DNA of 64,000 nucleotides, taken from the IMG/VR virus record IMGVR_UViG_3300031884_000002, positions 289,773 through 353,772 of that record. One strand, written 5' to 3'. The first letter of the stretch is position 1; each line of letters begins with the position of its first letter. Below, in pieces: positions 40,967 to 59,499 of this stretch. The notes beneath the pieces are model-generated. The model saw nothing but the letters and a program-made list of their open reading frames with translations, was not told where the DNA came from and searched no databases. A program made the position numbers and the translations under genes.

Positions 40967-42844
40967 TTACTTGGGATTTTTCAATTTATCTGCTTCGATG
41001 GTTTCTAATATATGCTTAACCAATCCACTTCTAACACAATCTTCAATAGTAAATCTAAATACATATATTCCTTTTTTTCTATGATTCTCACCATCGAATA
41101 GGTTCATCATTTTTTCAAACCCAGATTTTCCATTTATATCACTCTGTCCTACATCTCCAAGAATGAAAACTTTACTAAACTCTCCAGTTCTAGTTATAAA
41201 CGTCAATATCTCCTTATAGGTACAATTTTGAAATTCATCTCCTATAATTGCCTTTGCATTGAAGTTTAATCCTCTTAAAAAACTTATAGGTATGCCGGAT
41301 ATTCTTTTATCCTTATTTAACATTTCTATTTCGTGTTTTGGTAATAATTCTTCCAGTTTATCAATAAGAGGTTGTAAATACACATGTACCTTATCGTCTA
41401 CTGTACCTGGCAATGCTCCCATCGATTTATCGGAACATTCAACTATACTTCTAGCATATATTATATCGCTTACTTTTTTATCACTTAATAATTGCAATGC
41501 CGCCATAATTGATAAATATGTATTATGAGTTACAATAAAATTATTTGTTAAATATAAATGTGATGTGTTATCCACTAAAATACATTGACATTCTTTTTTA
41601 CCTACTAATTCTATGTTTGTGATATATCTGATAGGTTTATATTTTGTCTTGGGGACTAATAAATCTGCTTTTCTTTTTAAGAAAAATGGATTGATATGTG
41701 GTGGCATACATACACTAATATTATAATAGTCTAATCCTTGTATTTCTTCGGTTAAATATGTATAATGATTTTTATATTTGTTTATTCTACAAACTCCTCC
41801 CAAAGATTCTATTAAAAATCTTATGTTATTTGCTAACTGTTGTGATGTAGTAGTATAACTAGTTTCTGTTCCGCTTCTTTTCCCTACTGTCCCATCAGTA
41901 TCCATCAATCCTCTTAATAAGTCTATTCTATTTTCTATCGAATCAAATAAATAATCATTGGGTATGAATTTAGAATCCGACTTTATCATATCTAAATTAA
42001 ATCTTTTTATTTCATTTTTAATATAGTTTCCATTATTTAATGATTCTGATTTATTTTTATGAATTATAGAATATTCATATATTGCAGATGGTATTTTATT
42101 TATTATTATATTAGAAGGAAGTTCATTTTCAATTTTTTTAATAATTTCATCATCAGCCGATGTAAATCTAACATATCCCGGAACTCTAAAACATCCATCT
42201 CCAAGTAATGCTCCCAATATATATGGAGATATAATATGAGATTTTGAACTAAACTTAACTGGGGCTGTTATGGGAATTGAATGATTTAATCTAGTTCCAT
42301 TTCTAAGTTTTAACGAATTGATTATTTCTGCTGTAGTTTTAACTGTTCCGTTTTTTGGATTAGTCCAATATCGTTTTCCTTTTATTTTAATTCGTTGATT
42401 CCTGTCTTTTTCAGTTTGAGTTAACCATAAATGTTCCAGTGTTGATTCGGTTGATGTATCATCTGAAAATGTAATTTTATATATATCCTTAATACCTTGT
42501 GGGTGTATGGATATTACTTTATGAGATATTCCATCTTCTCCGAATATCATATCTCCAATCTTAACATTTCCCATTTGTATAATACCGGATTCTCCTATGA
42601 GTTCAGCATCTAATGGTTGTGCTTTTGATGTTCCAGCAGGACCAGAGACAAATATCATTTTTACTTCTTTATTGGATGCTAATTCTAAAAACTCCTTCTG
42701 TCTAGGAGTTAAATCGCTTCTTTTAAAAATGTTTAATGCAGATTTTAATTTATTTCTCTGAAATATTACAGGAGTTTTATCTTTACTATAATCGGTTGAT
42801 TCTGGGGTTGGTTCATGATTTAGTTTCTTGTTTTTTTTACTCAT
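40967..42844 (-). CDS. phoH: PhoH-family ATPase with an intein (about 258 aa after splicing)
   Basis: Walker A SGPAGTSK|TYLS is split by the intein; also LPGTVDDK, PISFLRGLNF, IIGDEFQN and LGDVGQSD. Confidence 0.94.
   Translation of the reverse strand: MSKKNKKLNHEPTPESTDYSKDKTPVIFQRNKLKSALNIFKRSDLTPRQKEFLELASNKEVKMIFVSGPAGTSKAQPLDAELIGESGIIQMGNVKIGDMIFGEDGISHKVISIHPQGIKDIYKITFSDDTSTESTLEHLWLTQTEKDRNQRIKIKGKRYWTNPKNGTVKTTAEIINSLKLRNGTRLNHSIPITAPVKFSSKSHIISPYILGALLGDGCFRVPGYVRFTSADDEIIKKIENELPSNIIINKIPSAIYEYSIIHKNKSESLNNGNYIKNEIKRFNLDMIKSDSKFIPNDYLFDSIENRIDLLRGLMDTDGTVGKRSGTETSYTTTSQQLANNIRFLIESLGGVCRINKYKNHYTYLTEEIQGLDYYNISVCMPPHINPFFLKRKADLLVPKTKYKPIRYITNIELVGKKECQCILVDNTSHLYLTNNFIVTHNTYLSIMAALQLLSDKKVSDIIYARSIVECSDKSMGALPGTVDDKVHVYLQPLIDKLEELLPKHEIEMLNKDKRISGIPISFLRGLNFNAKAIIGDEFQNCTYKEILTFITRTGEFSKVFILGDVGQSDINGKSGFEKMMNLFDGENHRKKGIYVFRFTIEDCVRSGLVKHILETIEADKLKNPK
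41522..42622 (-). mobile_element. Ala-initiated (class-3-type) intein with LAGLIDADG endonuclease, 367 aa
   Basis: Starts AQPLDA, block B HLW, block F CQCI, ends VTHN|T; LAGLIDADG motifs LGALLGDG and LRGLMDTDG. Confidence 0.9.
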
Positions 42845-43169: not shown

Positions 43170-44498
43170 CTACCCACCCGCTAAAGCAGGTGGGTTTCCC
43201 ACACCTAACTTTAGTTTCTTGGTTTCGCAGGTCATTGACTTGATTACTCTTTCTGTTTTATCAGATACCATCCTCAACGCCTTGCTGCGTTTTTGTTTAG
43301 GGTCCGATTTGGTTCCCAAACCAGACAAACCTTGTTTCAATATATTCAAGGACGCATTATAGTCCCTGTCGTGATGGACATTACAAATAGGACACTCCCA
43401 TTCTCTATCACTTTCCTTTAATGATTGGTTTATGTATCCACAATCATTACAGGTTTTAGAGGACGGAAACCATCTATCTATCTGGACAAACTTCCTATTA
43501 TTCCATTCACTTTTGTATTTGAGTTGTCTTACAATCTCATACCAAGATACTTCTTGTATTGACCTTGCTTTCCTATGGTCTTTCATCATATTGGAGATAC
43601 TCAAGTCTTCCATCACAATAATGTCGTGGTTTTTGACAATATCGTTGGTGAGTTTGTGGGTATAGTCCAATTTTACATTGGTTATCTTTTCGTATGTTTT
43701 TGCTAACTCAACTCTTGCTCTTTCTCTATTCTTTCCTTTCTTTGTTTTTTTGGAATGTTGTCTCTGCTGATATTCCAGTTTCTTTCGGTATTTCTTTGCT
43801 ATTCTTGGATTGGGAATCTTCTTTCCATCTGAGAAAGTAATCAAATCAATCAGTCCCAAATCAATGCCTACACTCTTGTTTGTTTTCTTAACCTTCGGCG
43901 TAAAATCTTCTTCAACAATGAAAGAGACAAAGTATTTGTTCGTCTTGGTCTTGGAAATGATAAGAAAAGCAATCTCATAGTTCTCTCCAAATGGTCTATG
44001 ATGATTTACCTTAATAGGAGTTTTGAGTTTTGGTATTGTAAGCAATCCATTCTCAAATGAGAAGTGTTGGGGAACACAAAATGATTGCTTGTCATATTTG
44101 GACTTAAACGATGGAAACTTGGCAATCTTCTTAAAAAATCGTTGGTATGCTACATCAAGTTGTCGCAAAGATTGCTGGAGAGATTGACTATTGACTTCAT
44201 TCAACCATTCAGTATCTTTCTGTTCCTTGAGTTCCGTTAGAAGTTTAGCAGTATCATTGTATCCAATACCTTTACCATTTTTGAGGTAGTATTCTTTGCG
44301 AGCATTAAGAAATCGGTTAAAGACAAAGCGGGAACATCCAAAGGATTTAGCAAAGAATATTTTCTGTTCTTCGGTTGGAAGAACTTGGAACTTGTATCCT
44401 CTGGTTATTCTTTTTATTGTCATCAGATATAAGTATATTGGACTTTTACAAGAAGTTATTTTATTTGTAAATATTTCAATGTTGTCTATGGGTCGCAT
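43170..44498 (-). CDS. tnpB: TnpB RNA-guided endonuclease (start may be MTIKRIT)
   Basis: HTH GYKFQVLPTEEQ...FGCSRFVFN, RuvC VGIDLG / IVMEDL / DRDYNAS, and Zn finger CNDCG..CPIC. Confidence 0.95.
   Translation of the reverse strand: MRPIDNIEIFTNKITSCKSPIYLYLMTIKRITRGYKFQVLPTEEQKIFFAKSFGCSRFVFNRFLNARKEYYLKNGKGIGYNDTAKLLTELKEQKDTEWLNEVNSQSLQQSLRQLDVAYQRFFKKIAKFPSFKSKYDKQSFCVPQHFSFENGLLTIPKLKTPIKVNHHRPFGENYEIAFLIISKTKTNKYFVSFIVEEDFTPKVKKTNKSVGIDLGLIDLITFSDGKKIPNPRIAKKYRKKLEYQQRQHSKKTKKGKNRERARVELAKTYEKITNVKLDYTHKLTNDIVKNHDIIVMEDLSISNMMKDHRKARSIQEVSWYEIVRQLKYKSEWNNRKFVQIDRWFPSSKTCNDCGYINQSLKESDREWECPICNVHHDRDYNASLNILKQGLSGLGTKSDPKQKRSKALRMVSDKTERVIKSMTCETKKLKLGVGNPPALAGG
43173..43194. repeat. 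IS right-end hairpin
   Basis: CCCACCCGC-TAAA-GCAGGTGGG on the plus strand. Confidence 0.85.
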
Positions 44499-48820: not shown

Positions 48821-49588
48821 TTATTTAATTACTTGTAATGAATATGCTTCCGATAAATAATCATTTAAATAAACATAGGGTAATAGAAAATAACCATTTA
48901 ATGCCCATTGGTCCGACCAACTATTTCTAACGATAAGATATTGTAAATTATTTACATATCCACACACTAAAACCGCATGACCTCCCAATAATTTTTCTTT
49001 TGTGATATCTGGTAATGGAACTATTCCTGTTTTTGCTACTGTATCACTTTCAAAACTTTCATATAATGTAATTCCAATAATAACCGGATGATTATTTGCC
49101 AAACTATGTTGAATATCGTTTAAATTATTACAGGTATTAAATTGTAATAATACATTAGAAGATGCCGATGCATAACATTCATTTAATGGTTTGACCGTAA
49201 ACTTAGTAATATCATACGGCCAATCAGATTCCGCACATATTCCTTGTTGTTTTAATGATATACATCCATCACCTAAACAAGCACCGCTATCTTGGTCTAT
49301 TGTATTTTCAATAGTTCTTTCGTTATAATATAGAAATAAACGAGAAGGATTCGGATTTAGAGATGGTAAATTTTGAGATTTTAATTCGTAATTAAAAGCA
49401 GCGGCAAATGCGTTAGCAGAACACGAACCCAAATTTCCTTGGTCATATACTGGGTCTAATAGTAAAGTTTCTCTTAAATCAACTGTATCTGGCAATGGAA
49501 CTGAAGAAGGTTCTGCCACCATCAACTTAGATGGATGAAATAAATGATGTTTTGGAGTTGGTTTTAAATTGTAAATGTGTTTATTCAT
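48821..49588 (-). CDS. Papain-like cysteine peptidase (C1A)
   Basis: DQGNLGSCSANA (Gln, Cys), GGHAV (His) and VRNSW (Asn). Start at 49588 is supported by the upstream TATTTATA. Confidence 0.9.
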   Translation of the reverse strand: MNKHIYNLKPTPKHHLFHPSKLMVAEPSSVPLPDTVDLRETLLLDPVYDQGNLGSCSANAFAAAFNYELKSQNLPSLNPNPSRLFLYYNERTIENTIDQDSGACLGDGCISLKQQGICAESDWPYDITKFTVKPLNECYASASSNVLLQFNTCNNLNDIQHSLANNHPVIIGITLYESFESDTVAKTGIVPLPDITKEKLLGGHAVLVCGYVNNLQYLIVRNSWSDQWALNGYFLLPYVYLNDYLSEAYSLQVIK

Positions 49589-49751
49589 ATAGTTTCCTAT
49601 ATAAATATAACAATCAACCATTATTATTTTTTAATAATTTATGTATTTTATAAAACTTAGATGGTTTTAATTTAGCCTCTTTACGAAACTCCTTTTCGGA
49701 TTTTATTCGCTTATTCCAAGATGGTAAGTTTAAGTTTTTCATTATAAACAA

Positions 49752-50565: not shown

Positions 50566-50922
50566 TCAATGATGATGACTTCCTCCATTATTAAAATGGT
50601 CGTCATGACCAGAATGAGATTTCCAATTTCCATGTCCTCTTTCCCATCCATGGAAACGTTCTAACCGCCAAGGTTCGCAATGATACCAAAATCCACTGGG
50701 ACCAAGATACATATATTCTCCCCCAGCAACTCCTACATATTCAAATCCATCCCATATATACGTTTCGGGATATAATCCAATTCCCACTACGGGTTGCGAT
50801 ACAACCACTGGAGCAGGACCACTAATAACCATGCTAGGAGTAGTCCATGTAGCAACACATCCTGATAAGGTTAATGACATTAACAATCCAACTAATATAC
50901 TAACTGTTTTTGTATTTTTCAT
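50566..50922 (-). CDS. Putative lipoprotein with Gly/His-rich tail
   Basis: Lipobox LSGC after a hydrophobic signal peptide. Start moved to MKNTKTV to avoid the tRNA-Val overlap. Confidence 0.7.
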   Translation of the reverse strand: MKNTKTVSILVGLLMSLTLSGCVATWTTPSMVISGPAPVVVSQPVVGIGLYPETYIWDGFEYVGVAGGEYMYLGPSGFWYHCEPWRLERFHGWERGHGNWKSHSGHDDHFNNGGSHHH

Positions 50923-50925
50923 AAA

Positions 50926-50999
50926 TGGTACGGGATAAAGGAATTGAACCTTTTCTTTTTGAGTGTAAATCAAAATCGCTACCATTACAACAATCCCGC
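50926..50999 (-). tRNA. tRNA-Val(UAC)
   Basis: TTTGA-TTTACAC-TCAAA, T-arm, A73, CCA. Confidence 0.88.
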
Positions 51000-51086: not shown

Positions 51087-51332
51087 TTAAACTTTATTAT
51101 CTTGCCAATCTTTTACTATTTTATCTAAAATCTCTTTATCTATTCTTTGTGCTAATAAGTTGGCAGATGGAGAGGGATTAAATTCCCACTTATTACATTT
51201 AGGACACTTATAATATGACGGTATAACTGGATTTCCCATATCTCCAATTATGGGGTCACTATCCTCGATGACTTCCATTTTAATTATTAAATTATCTATC
51301 TCTTCACATTTTTTACATATTTCATTATTCAT
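51087..51332 (-). CDS. Small Zn-finger hypothetical protein
   Basis: CKKC...CPKC pairs. Confidence 0.6.
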
Positions 51333-52174
51333 AAATTATTTCTCGCAGTCAAGTTTTGCAACCATATCAAGTCATTATTTCCAACAGTTGGAGCAAGCGA
51401 CGGAATATTAGGATATGAGAATCTCATATTAAGAACAATTGGGTCGGTCCATTTTTTAATTTGAACATGTCCATCACAAAACGATATTCCATTTGCTCCA
51501 TTATGATATGTAGCTGGATAATCTACCCAATATAATGTAGATACATCATCAGAATTTGATTTTGGATATTCTATAAAATATGCATCATTTATAGTATATG
51601 GACTTTCATCCATCATTAACCATATATTAGATGGTCCCATAATAGCAAGTGAGTTTTCAGTTCTCATTGCAATTCCCGTTTTGTTTTTATTAAAAACATT
51701 AATCGGATTAAGCCATCCATTCATAGACATACTTCTACATCTAGGAACCAATTGATTATGAATCGAAACCGTACTAACATCAGATGGACAATGATAAATG
51801 TTTGGTTGTTTAGAATAAGGATAAATACATCCTATTTTAATCCATGCCGCATTCGTAGGTTCTCCTACCGGAGCAATTGAATCCATTCTCCCCGGACACC
51901 ATTGTAGAGTTGCCCCTTGAGAATCCATTGCCGTATTTGGCTGAGACCCGATTTCTCCATTTGGAGCCAAAATACCATTATTATCTTGCGAATACATCGT
52001 CCATGCCATTCCAAGTTGTTTTAAATTATTAACACATGCTATACCCTGTGCCGTTTGTTTAGCTTTAGTTAATACTGGCAATAACATTGCAGCCAAAATT
52101 GAAATGATTGCAATTACAACTAGTAATTCTACTAATGTAAATCCCAAACATATTTTGCTGTTTTTTATTTTCAT
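51329..52174 (-). CDS. Prepilin-type N-terminal cleavage/methylation protein with H-X9-DG motif (DUF1559-like)
   Basis: [44 protein letters not shown] and [15 protein letters not shown]. Confidence 0.92.
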
Positions 52175-52180
52175 AAAATA

Positions 52181-52360
52181 TTATTGTCCGTTCACGGATT
52201 TCCATTCTTCTGTAGTATAATAAGATGAATATTGATATATATCGTCTTTATAATGTTTTTCAACATATTCGATTTCCCATAATTGCATTAACAATTTATT
52301 TACAAAATGTAAATGTGCTGACGGAGTTTCTCGTGTGATTTCAGTAATAACTTTTTTCAT
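52181..52360 (-). CDS. Hypothetical protein (start moved to MKKVITE)
   Basis: The longer ORF start overlaps tRNA-Cys. Confidence 0.5.
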   Translation of the reverse strand: MKKVITEITRETPSAHLHFVNKLLMQLWEIEYVEKHYKDDIYQYSSYYTTEEWKSVNGQ

Positions 52361-52366
52361 AAAAGA

Positions 52367-52447
52367 TGGAGCACAGTGTTGGAATCGAACCAACTCTTTT
52401 AATTAGCAGTTTTGCAGACTGCCGCCTTCCCATTTGGCTAACCGTGC
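52367..52447 (-). tRNA. tRNA-Cys(GCA) with 11-nt variable region
   Basis: GCAGT-CTGCAAA-ACTGC, U73, CCA. Confidence 0.85.
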
Positions 52448-59388: not shown

Positions 59389-59499
59389 ATCTTAATATAA
59401 TTTACTACATTATTCGTGCGGAATCGAACCGTGCCTTTCCCTGCAACGGGAACGTTCTTCCATTGAACTATATACAAACACCTTCGATTATATTAAGAT
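59389..59499 (-). other. Degenerate tRNA-Ala(UGC)-like core enclosed by a 13-bp perfect inverted repeat
   Basis: ATCTTAATATAAT (59389-59401) and ATTATATTAAGAT (59487-59499) enclose D-, anticodon- and T-loop-like hairpins. Confidence 0.4.

What the first reader, a model, noticed from the sequence alone, without database searches (positions are those of the whole stretch)
51329..52174. Phage-borne type IV prepilin-like DUF1559/H-X9-DG protein, pointing to a PVC (Verrucomicrobiota-like) host
Seen: an intact class III signal G|[13 protein letters not shown], then CxNNLKQ, YxCPSD and H-X9-DG motifs. Established: this family is hugely expanded in Planctomycetota, Verrucomicrobiota and Lentisphaerae and is processed by prepilin peptidase. 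Inference: the phage captured a host pilin-like gene that could enter or jam host pili/pseudopili (receptor masking), and it is the best host clue in the window.
Basis: partly seen in the sequence, partly recalled or inferred. Interest (0 to 1): 0.62.

Follow-up and report, generated by a model that had tools for sequence, protein, structure and literature searches.

The report
Jumbo phage carries orphan pilin-like gene
A 354-kb T4-like freshwater-type jumbo phage carries one intact, long-domesticated copy of a pilin-like gene family that is otherwise massively expanded in Verrucomicrobiota, probably to tamper with its host's surface filaments; it is a useful but not decisive clue to the host.

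Summary
Window 51329-52174 (-) encodes an intact 281-aa protein with a prepilin (class III) signal, the CVNNLKQ and YHCPSD motifs, and a literal H224-x9-D234-G235.

It is a full-length member (up to 63% identity) of the Verrucomicrobiota-type H-X9-DG/DUF1559 pseudopilin-like family. It keeps 64 of 68 family-conserved positions. A confident model shows a pilin-like α1 helix plus a large head.

The contig is not chimeric: the same neighbourhood occurs in independent assemblies, and the gene's codon usage is fully phage-like (GC3 0.22, against 0.59-0.81 in bacterial homologues). This is therefore an old, selected acquisition, not a recent capture.

The phage is a 353,772-bp T4-like jumbo myovirus with one such gene and no prepilin peptidase. 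A close relative lacks the gene at this locus. Bacterial orthologues always follow a large lectin/CBM gene, and the phage copy is an orphan.

The host inference is only partly supported. The gene tree and SD-less translation fit Verrucomicrobiota. However, the capsid's nearest cultured relatives infect Microcystis and Flavobacterium, and the phage is 30% GC against 52-65%.

Receptor masking is plausible by precedent (prophage FimU) but untested.

The parts
51329..52174 (-). Gene for the 281-aa prepilin-type H-X9-DG / DUF1559 pseudopilin-like protein (P0001); the end coordinate includes the stop codon.
   Evidence: ORF and translation. Pfam and NCBIfam hits. Full-length homologues at 45-63% identity. 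AF2 model with pLDDT 93.4.
52142..52174 (-). Codons 1-11: a short basic leader ending in G11. The predicted prepilin-peptidase cleavage site lies between G11 and F12.
   Evidence: Read from the sequence. N_methyl/TIGR02532 matches cover residues 10-32. Cleavage itself is inferred, not shown.
51983..52141 (-). Codons 12-64: F+1, E+5 and the long hydrophobic/amphipathic α1 helix typical of type IV pilins and pseudopilins.
   Evidence: AF2 helix 14-64. The profile matches solved pilins and GspG only over this helix.
51470..51505 (-). Codons 224-235: the literal H-x9-DG motif (H224 ... D234-G235), followed by invariant H236.
   Evidence: H224 and H236 are invariant and D234/G235 are at least 90% conserved across 140 sequences. 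The TIGR04294 partial match falls here but is below cut-off.
52181..52360 (-). Small upstream ORF (59 aa from ATG 52360) ending 6 nt before the pilin-like start. Same strand, probably co-transcribed.
   Evidence: Sequence. Called as a 59-aa gene in independent assemblies. No family hit.
51087..51332 (-). 81-aa ORF with two CxxC pairs (zinc-ribbon-like). Its start overlaps the pilin-like gene's stop by 4 nt (ATGA), which suggests translational coupling.
   Evidence: ORF list. Called in all assemblies. No Pfam hit.
50566..50922 (-). 118-aa ORF with a lipobox (LTLSG|C) and a His-rich C-terminus: a predicted lipoprotein and a second envelope-targeted cargo gene just downstream.
   Evidence: Translation. 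Called as a 118-aa gene. No Pfam hit. The lipoprotein call is by eye from the motif.
52367..52447 (-). tRNA-Cys(GCA), bounding the small gene cluster upstream.
   Evidence: ARAGORN.
50926..50999 (-). tRNA-Val(TAC), between the CxxC ORF and the lipoprotein ORF. The pilin-like gene lies inside the phage's tRNA-rich variable region.
   Evidence: ARAGORN. The stretch from about 50.5 to 55.7 kb is replaced in the related phage L017.

Best explanation
The gene is an orphan copy of the Verrucomicrobiota-type H-X9-DG (DUF1559) prepilin-like family. It has long been resident in the phage and is kept under selection in a 354-kb T4-like jumbo phage.

Proposed mechanism (inferred): in the infected cell the preprotein inserts into the inner membrane through its class III signal. 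The host's prepilin peptidase cleaves it after G11, because the phage encodes no such enzyme. Its pilin-type α1 helix then lets it enter the host's type II-secretion or type IV-pilus-like assembly machinery. There it replaces or competes with the host's own family members. This changes what the cell displays on these filaments, most likely blocking adsorption of competing phages (superinfection exclusion), as shown for prophage-encoded FimU.

Shown here: identity, intactness, family conservation, phage-adapted codon usage, accessory status, absence of a phage peptidase, and presence of the peptidase in candidate hosts.

Inferred: processing, incorporation and the exclusion phenotype.
For: - Intact ORF with all prepilin features.
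- Full-length homology of 45-63% to thousands of cellular members; it keeps 64 of 68 positions that are at least 90% conserved in the other 139 sequences.
- Confident AF2 model (pLDDT 93.4, pTM 0.88) with α1 helix 14-64 plus a β-rich head. TM 0.87 to Atlas 'PulG-family' N_methyl+DUF1559 clusters. The best whole-length PDB matches are pilins and pseudopilins, though weak (Z 3.5-4.9).
- Codon usage at the 52nd percentile of phage ORFs; GC3 0.22 against 0.59-0.81 in bacterial homologues.
- Identical protein and neighbourhood in 21 contigs from several samples.
- Only one prepilin gene and no Peptidase_A24 in the whole phage; Peptidase_A24 is present in all four Verrucomicrobiota genomes tested.
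- The gene sits in a variable tRNA/cargo region next to a predicted lipoprotein and is absent at the syntenic site of a close relative.
- A second phage-like contig carries a family member just after its tail genes.
- Precedent: phage FimU is incorporated into T4P and blocks tip-binding phages, and PilA-like genes occur in virulent phages (PMC12952977).
Against: - The function of the H-X9-DG/DUF1559 family is unknown (PMC10632474), and no member has been shown to be in a pilus.
- The globular head has no significant solved structural relative.
- Bacterial orthologues of this subfamily are always paired with a large lectin/CBM protein, which hints at a role in glycan capture or secretion rather than as a phage receptor.
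- No recognisable promoter was found.
- The host is unidentified, so compatibility with its machinery is assumed.
Confidence: 0.45

Rival explanations
1. Auxiliary 'metabolic' role. The protein supplements the host's lectin/CBM-linked pseudopilin system, keeping or boosting capture, secretion or uptake of polysaccharide during infection to fuel phage replication. It would not be acting against other phages.
For: In every bacterial locus examined, the closest homologues lie 30-674 bp downstream of a same-strand 600-990-aa protein with Laminin_G_3 or CBM_6 domains, often near glycoside hydrolases. The phage also carries many other metabolic cargo genes, including NAMPT, CoA genes and a sugar-modification cluster.
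Against: The phage has no homologue of the large partner, so it supplies only half of the cassette. The family's role in glycan use is itself only an inference from gene neighbourhood.
Confidence: 0.2
2. Host rival. The present host is not a PVC bacterium but a low-GC member of another Shine-Dalgarno-poor lineage (Bacteroidota or Cyanobacteria). The gene would be an old cross-phylum acquisition that works with any prepilin peptidase, so it is a clue to past rather than present gene exchange.
For: The major capsid protein's nearest cultured relatives are Microcystis phage Mel-JY01 (52%), Flavobacterium phage immuto (51.5%) and Rhodothermus phage RM378 (36.6%). The phage is 30.5% GC, while all loci with family members are 52-65% GC. 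The gene is fully ameliorated and on a long branch. SD-less initiation also fits Bacteroidota.
Against: DUF1559 matched none of 14 control genomes, including Bacteroides and Synechococcus, and B. thetaiotaomicron lacks Peptidase_A24. Every typed relative of the gene is Verrucomicrobiota apart from one 4.4-kb Acidobacteriota-labelled MAG contig. The Verrucomicrobiota genomes tested are equally SD-poor. Capsid identity of about 52% already spans two phyla, so it does not fix the host phylum.
Confidence: 0.4
3. Neutral passenger: a decaying or functionless hitch-hiker in a variable region.
For: It lies in a hypervariable tRNA/cargo region, and the gene is missing at this site in a related phage.
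Against: The frame is intact. It keeps 64 of 68 conserved positions, and the four changes are conservative. It is fully codon-adapted, which implies long retention. The protein is identical in 21 contigs.
Confidence: 0.05
4. Virion or adsorption role: the protein is part of, or decorates, the phage particle.
For: In L016 a family member lies directly after tail and baseplate genes.
Against: A class III signal directs insertion into the inner membrane and peptidase processing, which is not a route into a cytoplasmically assembled T4-like virion. The gene is far from the structural modules, in the tRNA region. There is no PHROG structural hit, only 'pilin, moron'.
Confidence: 0.04

Closest known systems
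Bacterial 'prepilin-type processing-associated H-X9-DG' / DUF1559 (PF07596, TIGR04294) proteins of Verrucomicrobiota and Planctomycetota
   Same: Same length, same class III signal, and the same conserved Cys, Trp and H-x9-DG positions. Identity is 45-63% over the full length. The predicted fold is the same (TM 0.87).
   Different: It is encoded by a phage and is a single copy rather than one of 60-70 paralogues. It is AT-adapted and lacks the upstream lectin/CBM partner seen with its bacterial orthologues. It scores below the TIGR04294 cut-off.
Prophage-encoded FimU (P-FimU) and phage PilA-like proteins of Pseudomonas and Xylella phages (PMC12952977)
   Same: These are phage-encoded type IV pilin-like proteins with no phage-encoded assembly machinery. 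P-FimU is incorporated into the host pilus and blocks rival phages. PilA-like genes also occur in virulent phages.
   Different: The pilin family is different (no relation beyond the N-terminal helix). The head is much larger, the host machinery is unknown, and no phenotype has been tested. The gene sits in a T4-like jumbo phage rather than a temperate Pseudomonas phage.
T2SS major pseudopilin GspG/PulG
   Same: The N-terminal 55 residues align (TIGR01710 at E 2.5e-8; PDB 5wda). Automatic names of the Atlas clusters say 'PulG family'.
   Different: It scores 34 bits against an equivalog cut-off of 88.85. The head is about twice the size, and structural similarity is only weak (EpsG Z 3.8). It is not a GspG orthologue.

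Membership tests
Type IV pilin-like (prepilin, class III signal) proteins: PF07963 / TIGR02532 | N-terminal cleavage/methylation motif scoring over the curated cut-offs | tested here: met
   PF07963 scores 29.7 bits against 21.2. TIGR02532 scores 28.2 against 16.3. A six-frame search of the genome gives 33.2 bits.
Type IV pilin-like (prepilin, class III signal) proteins: PF07963 / TIGR02532 | Short basic leader, Gly at -1, Phe at +1, Glu at +5, then about 20 hydrophobic residues | tested here: met
   Read from the translation: [11 protein letters not shown] | [21 protein letters not shown].
Type IV pilin-like (prepilin, class III signal) proteins: PF07963 / TIGR02532 | Long α1 helix packed on a β-sheet head | tested here: met
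   The AF2 model (pLDDT 93.4) has helix 14-64 followed by β strands. The top whole-length PDB matches are pilins and pseudopilins, but at weak Z of 3.5-4.9.
Type IV pilin-like (prepilin, class III signal) proteins: PF07963 / TIGR02532 | Cleavage and N-methylation by a prepilin peptidase, and assembly into a filament | not testable with these tools
   The phage has no Peptidase_A24. Four Verrucomicrobiota genomes have it. Processing is inferred.
DUF1559 / SBP_bac_10 (PF07596) | Score over Pfam's gathering cut-off | tested here: met
   The protein scan gives 28.1 bits against 23.3. The six-frame scan gives only 20.5 bits.
DUF1559 / SBP_bac_10 (PF07596) | Match along the whole 268-position domain | tested here: not met
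   Only model positions 2-50 align. Most close homologues likewise carry the family only faintly or not at all.
Prepilin-type processing-associated H-X9-DG domain (TIGR04294) | Score over the curated cut-off of the 22-position model | tested here: not met
   It scores 10 bits (E 0.56) against 19. Many genuine Verrucomicrobiota paralogues of the same subfamily also score 14-18 bits in the same call.
Prepilin-type processing-associated H-X9-DG domain (TIGR04294) | Literal His, nine residues, Asp-Gly near the C-terminus, aligned with the family's conserved columns | tested here: met
   H224 and H236 are invariant and D234/G235 are at least 90% conserved in 140 sequences. Homologues at 50-63% identity are named H-X9-DG proteins by JGI.
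T2SS major pseudopilin GspG (TIGR01710) | Equivalog score | tested here: not met
   It scores 34 bits against 88.85, over the N-terminal 56 residues only.
Phage-encoded pilin used for superinfection exclusion (P-FimU type) | Pilin-like gene in a phage genome without its own assembly machinery | tested here: met
   The whole 353,772-bp phage holds one prepilin gene and no peptidase.
Phage-encoded pilin used for superinfection exclusion (P-FimU type) | Incorporation into the host filament and protection against phages | not testable with these tools
   This needs a cultured host. The precedent is PMC12952977.

The most novel reading that the evidence does not exclude
This would be the first jumbo (T4-like) phage of Verrucomicrobiota recognised from sequence. 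It would use a domesticated orphan H-X9-DG pseudopilin to hijack the host's lectin-linked pseudopilus system. That would give the first functional handle on a protein family that forms the largest paralogue group in many PVC genomes and whose role is unknown.
Probability: 0.2. Interest if true: 0.7.

Novelty: new member of a known kind. Interest (0 to 1): 0.42.

Why it matters
The H-X9-DG/DUF1559 family is the largest paralogue family in many Planctomycetota and Verrucomicrobiota, with 68 copies in Planctopirus (two of them essential; PMC10632474), and it has no known function.

A phage that keeps exactly one copy under selection offers a natural minimal experiment. What the phage gains from it should reveal what the family does, whether that is surface filament, secretion or glycan capture.

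This would also extend the recently shown principle of phage-encoded pilins as anti-phage surface replacements to a new pilin-like family and to environmental jumbo phages.

As a host clue it is useful but must not be used alone. This case shows how a fully ameliorated cargo gene can point to a donor lineage that other signals (capsid ancestry, GC content) do not confirm.

Tried and rejected
- **First AF2 model (32 sequences).** It was poor (pLDDT 52.7). A 140-sequence alignment including Verrucomicrobiota paralogues fixed it.
- **Structure searches.** Foldseek against PDB and BFVD gave nothing significant.
- **Phage databases.** INPHARED gave no match to the protein. IMG/VR with the single protein gave none. 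With the alignment's two motif patterns it gave only L016.
- **Phylum scan.** 401 sampled genomes of the phylum of G002 had no match at E<=1e-65. Only 6 candidates per genome were scored, so this is a weak negative.
- **Host clues that failed:**
  - TnpB relatives are on other jumbo-phage contigs.
  - The PHROG 'terminase' at 40967-42844 is a helicase/PhoH-like ATPase with relatives across many host phyla.
  - There is no rpS21.
  - EF-Ts is a phage-lineage gene, only 31-34% identical to Verrucomicrobiota EF-Ts.
  - Cluster look-ups gave no organism names.
  - Codons read by the phage's tRNAs are not enriched among codons rare in Verrucomicrobiota (p=0.56).
  - The closest homologues come from different samples than the phage.
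- **Neighbour-gene queries.** The neighbouring 200-aa ORF and the helicase found no useful extra relatives.
- **Promoter scan.** No more sites than in shuffled sequence.
- **TAG recoding.** Rejected; code 11 fits.
- I did not use the large representative search because the family was already clear. I did not run a complex prediction because no specific binding partner can be named.

Full report
**1. The observation**

Window 51329-52174 on the minus strand is an uninterrupted ORF of 281 codons. The translation shows, in order:
- an 11-residue basic leader ending in Gly;
- Phe-Thr-Leu-Val-Glu and a hydrophobic run;
- CVNNLKQ at residues 47-53;
- YHCPSD at residues 127-132;
- H224, nine residues, D234-G235, then H236.

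Family scans gave these results:
- Pfam N_methyl scores 29.7 bits (cut-off 21.2).
- Pfam DUF1559/SBP_bac_10 scores 28.1 bits (cut-off 23.3), but only over the first 50 of 268 model positions.
- NCBIfam TIGR02532 scores 28.2 bits (cut-off 16.3).
- GspG, ComGC and PilA equivalogs match only the N-terminal helix and fall far below their cut-offs.
- The tiny TIGR04294 H-X9-DG model scores 10 bits against 19. Many authentic paralogues of this subfamily in Verrucomicrobiota genomes also fall below it in the same search.

**2. What the contig is**

The window is the last 64 kb of a 353,772-bp IMG/VR virus record that CheckV rates as complete. The genome is 30.5% GC.

Bulk family scans of 169 ORFs of 180 aa or more, all from outside the window, show a T4-like jumbo myovirus. 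They found:
- a Gp23 major capsid protein, T4 baseplate, family B DNA polymerase, RecA/UvsX, ThyA, an NAD-dependent ligase and RNA ligases;
- many homing endonucleases and inteins;
- a short EF-Ts, a CCA-adding enzyme and NAMPT;
- a large sugar-modification cluster.

The genome has 25 tRNAs. Seventeen lie in the window, all on the minus strand and interleaved with small ORFs. The array continues at the start of the record. In another assembly the same gene lies at about 102 kb of a 353,817-bp contig. The genome is therefore circularly permuted, and the record's end is arbitrary.

**3. Not a chimera, and not a recent capture**

The identical protein is found on 21 contigs, 16 of them 0.2-1 Mb long. 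The same flanking genes appear in assemblies from a JGI sample and two SRA runs.

| Measure | Pilin-like gene | Phage ORFs | Bacterial homologue genes |
|---|---|---|---|
| GC | 0.34 | mean 0.305 | 0.51-0.61 |
| GC3 | 0.22 | mean 0.20, sd 0.06 | 0.59-0.81 |
| Synonymous-codon likelihood under phage usage | 52nd percentile of phage ORFs | reference | far lower |

The gene has been in an AT-rich phage lineage long enough to be completely ameliorated.

It has nevertheless stayed functional. Of the 68 alignment columns that are at least 90% conserved among the other 139 sequences, it keeps 64. The four differences are conservative (V/I, S/A, T/K, T/S). It ranks 34th of 140 on this measure.

**4. 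Family and origin**

The word search found more than 7,600 homologues. The best are full-length at 55-63% identity.

Evidence that the relatives are bacterial and mainly Verrucomicrobiota:
- The best hits with long contigs sit in ordinary bacterial chromosome contexts, with glycoside hydrolases, two-component systems and a Met-tRNA synthetase.
- Named hits are Verrucomicrobiota MAGs, plus one Acidobacteriota-labelled 4.4-kb MAG contig.
- All four hits in species-representative genomes are Verrucomicrobiota.
- Each of those four genomes contains 62-73 matches to the phage protein.
- All the nearest ESM Atlas clusters, by features and by structure, are N_methyl+DUF1559 families whose commonest known phylum is Verrucomicrobiota.
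- DUF1559 matched none of 14 control genomes, including Bacteroides, Synechococcus and E. coli.

In a maximum-likelihood tree of 140 sequences, the phage protein lies inside a clade of 62 sequences with SH-aLRT 98. That clade includes a named Verrucomicrobiota protein. The phage protein sits on an unresolved basal polytomy, and every deeper branch is a paralogue from Verrucomicrobiota genomes. Its terminal branch is 0.60 against a median of 0.15.

A Verrucomicrobiota-type donor is therefore well supported, with much divergence since the transfer.

**5. Structure**

With 32 sequences the model was poor. With 140 sequences, including 20 distant paralogues fetched from three Verrucomicrobiota genomes, AlphaFold2 gave pLDDT 93.4 and pTM 0.88. 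The model has a 50-residue α1 helix (residues 14-64) and a β-rich globular head of about 215 residues.

Comparisons with solved structures:
- By sequence, only the helix matches solved pilins and pseudopilins.
- Foldseek finds nothing significant in PDB or BFVD.
- The exhaustive aligner puts pilins first over the whole length: T. thermophilus PilA4 at Z 4.9 over 122 residues, then an ETEC type IVb pilin, ComP, PilV, EpsG and C. difficile PilA1. At these Z values this shows only a compatible architecture.

**6. Status in the phage**

The whole genome has one prepilin-type gene and no prepilin peptidase. All four Verrucomicrobiota genomes tested have the peptidase.

The gene is tightly packed on one strand in this order: tRNA-Cys, a 59-aa ORF ending 6 nt before it, the gene itself, an 81-aa CxxC ORF overlapping its stop by 4 nt, tRNA-Val, and a predicted lipoprotein. 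No promoter-like excess was seen.

A related phage fragment, L017, is 79-85% identical in nucleotide sequence. It is syntenic from window 34.9 to 50.5 kb and then jumps to about 55.7 kb. The 5.2 kb holding the gene is replaced there by about 1.7 kb. The gene is therefore accessory cargo.

Among 2.9 million IMG/VR contigs, a scan with two conserved family motifs found only one other carrier. That contig is a 56% GC siphovirus-like sequence in which the family member follows the tail and baseplate genes. No INPHARED phage has a match.

**7. A new contextual fact**

In every bacterial locus examined (L002-L005, L009, L013/L014 and the P0006 contigs), the homologue is preceded on the same strand by a 600-990-aa ORF, with a gap of 30-674 bp. 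These partners carry ConA-like lectin (Laminin_G_3) or CBM_6 domains and are homologous within two groups.

The phage has no detectable homologue of them. The phage copy is thus an orphan half of a bacterial two-gene cassette.

**8. The host**

Evidence for a Verrucomicrobiota or other PVC host:
- The origin and distribution of the gene, as set out above.
- A translation signal that I tested directly. The Shine-Dalgarno core occurs upstream of 4-5% of phage genes, below the 7-9% background.
- The same crude measure shows no enrichment in two Verrucomicrobiota genomes (13.6 vs 12.6% and 12.8 vs 12.0%) or in the contigs carrying the close homologues.
- The E. coli positive control gives 46% against 3.8%.

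Evidence against, or neutral:
- SD-poor initiation is also typical of Bacteroidota and Cyanobacteria (my own knowledge).
- The capsid protein's nearest cultured relatives infect exactly those groups: Microcystis 52%, Flavobacterium 51.5%, Rhodothermus 36.6%.
- The phage is 30% GC, against 52-65% for all loci carrying the family.
- TnpB, the helicase, EF-Ts, rpS21, the tRNA repertoire and sample co-occurrence gave no host information.

I put the probability of a PVC host at roughly 0.45. The gene is the best host clue in the window, but it is a clue to the donor lineage and does not establish the present host.

**9. Mechanism**

The safest reading is as follows:
1. The preprotein is inserted into the inner membrane and cleaved after G11 by the host's peptidase.
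2. Through its α1 helix it enters the host's T2SS- or T4P-type assembly platform.

What that achieves is inferred. The closest experimentally supported model is prophage FimU, which replaces the host minor pilin in the pilus and blocks phages that bind the tip. The same paper notes PilA-like genes in virulent phages and the logic of early superinfection exclusion (PMC12952977). The adjacent predicted lipoprotein fits a small module of envelope-directed cargo.

The main functional rival is that the protein feeds into the host's lectin/CBM-linked system for glycan capture or secretion. A neutral passenger is unlikely, given the conservation and codon adaptation.

**10. Verdict**

The observation and the family assignment are correct. 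The 'capture' is ancient. The host inference is plausible but unproven and partly contradicted. The mechanism is reasonable by analogy only.

This is a new, phage-borne member of a known protein family and of the known class of phage-encoded pilin-like cargo genes. Its interest is moderate. It would rise if the host proves to be a Verrucomicrobiota, or if the gene gives a functional handle on the family.

No alternative genetic code was used. The large representative search was not needed.

Noticed in passing
G000:C1:131456-131530 (outside the window): A tRNA with anticodon CTA (amber-suppressor type; ARAGORN labels it Pyl). TAG is a rare stop in this genome (14 of 271 long ORFs), but reading TAG through lengthens few frames, so there is no sign of genome-wide recoding.
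   Followed up: partly
whole phage genome; loci L046-L065 of G002/G004: The phage has essentially no Shine-Dalgarno usage (4-5% against 7-9% background), with A/T-rich, G-poor leaders and T at -1 in 74% of genes. The two Verrucomicrobiota genomes carrying the family also show no SD enrichment, whereas the E. coli control shows 46% against 3.8%.
   Followed up: yes
window 43170-44498 (-): A TnpB/IS605-type gene (PF12323, PF01385, PF07282). It is absent at the syntenic site of the related phage L017. Relatives at 83-92% identity lie on other 130-370-kb contigs that look like related jumbo phages. Five ORFs elsewhere in the genome carry the Cas12f1-like TNB domain.
   Followed up: partly
window 48821-49621 (-): A papain-family cysteine protease (Peptidase_C1, E 2e-17) in the tRNA region. 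An 88% identical copy is in related phage L017, and 39-46% relatives occur in giant-virus MAG contigs (GVMAG) of 24-25% GC.
   Followed up: no
window 50566-50922 (-): A 118-aa ORF with a lipobox (LTLSGC) and a His-rich C-terminal tail. It is a predicted phage lipoprotein with no family hit, lying two genes downstream of the pilin-like gene.
   Followed up: no
window 59409-59477 (-): ARAGORN reports a tRNA-like gene with an irregular anticodon loop ('tg', amino acid undetermined).
   Followed up: no
window 40967-42844 (-): PHROGs gives mixed 'terminase large subunit' and PhoH-like hits. INPHARED relatives are mostly annotated as helicase or DarB-like, so this is probably not the terminase.
   Followed up: partly
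G000:C1:101531-101938 (L072:6432-7097:-) and L087: A short (222-aa) EF-Ts. Relatives at 50-76% identity lie on other jumbo-phage contigs (for example a 312-kb NCBI contig with Thg1, DHFR, ThyA and a ligase). It is only 31-34% identical to Verrucomicrobiota EF-Ts, so it appears to be a phage-lineage translation factor.
   Followed up: partly
G000:C1:284836-285099 (-): A second, short Gp23-like match with two in-frame TGA codons, about 9 kb from the intact major capsid gene. It could be a decayed paralogue or a gp24-like remnant.
   Followed up: no
L002-L005, L009, L013, L089-L091 (bacterial loci): This subfamily of H-X9-DG genes forms a conserved two-gene cassette with an upstream 600-990-aa Laminin_G_3 or CBM_6 protein. 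I found no description of this in the papers searched.
   Followed up: partly
L016:7974-8747 (+) (IMGVR_UViG_3300031749_000474): The only other IMG/VR contig found with a family member (29-32% identity). It is 56% GC, and the gene lies directly after baseplate-hub and CBM-bearing tail genes and before a glycosyltransferase, an SMC-like ATPase and a UvrD helicase.
   Followed up: partly
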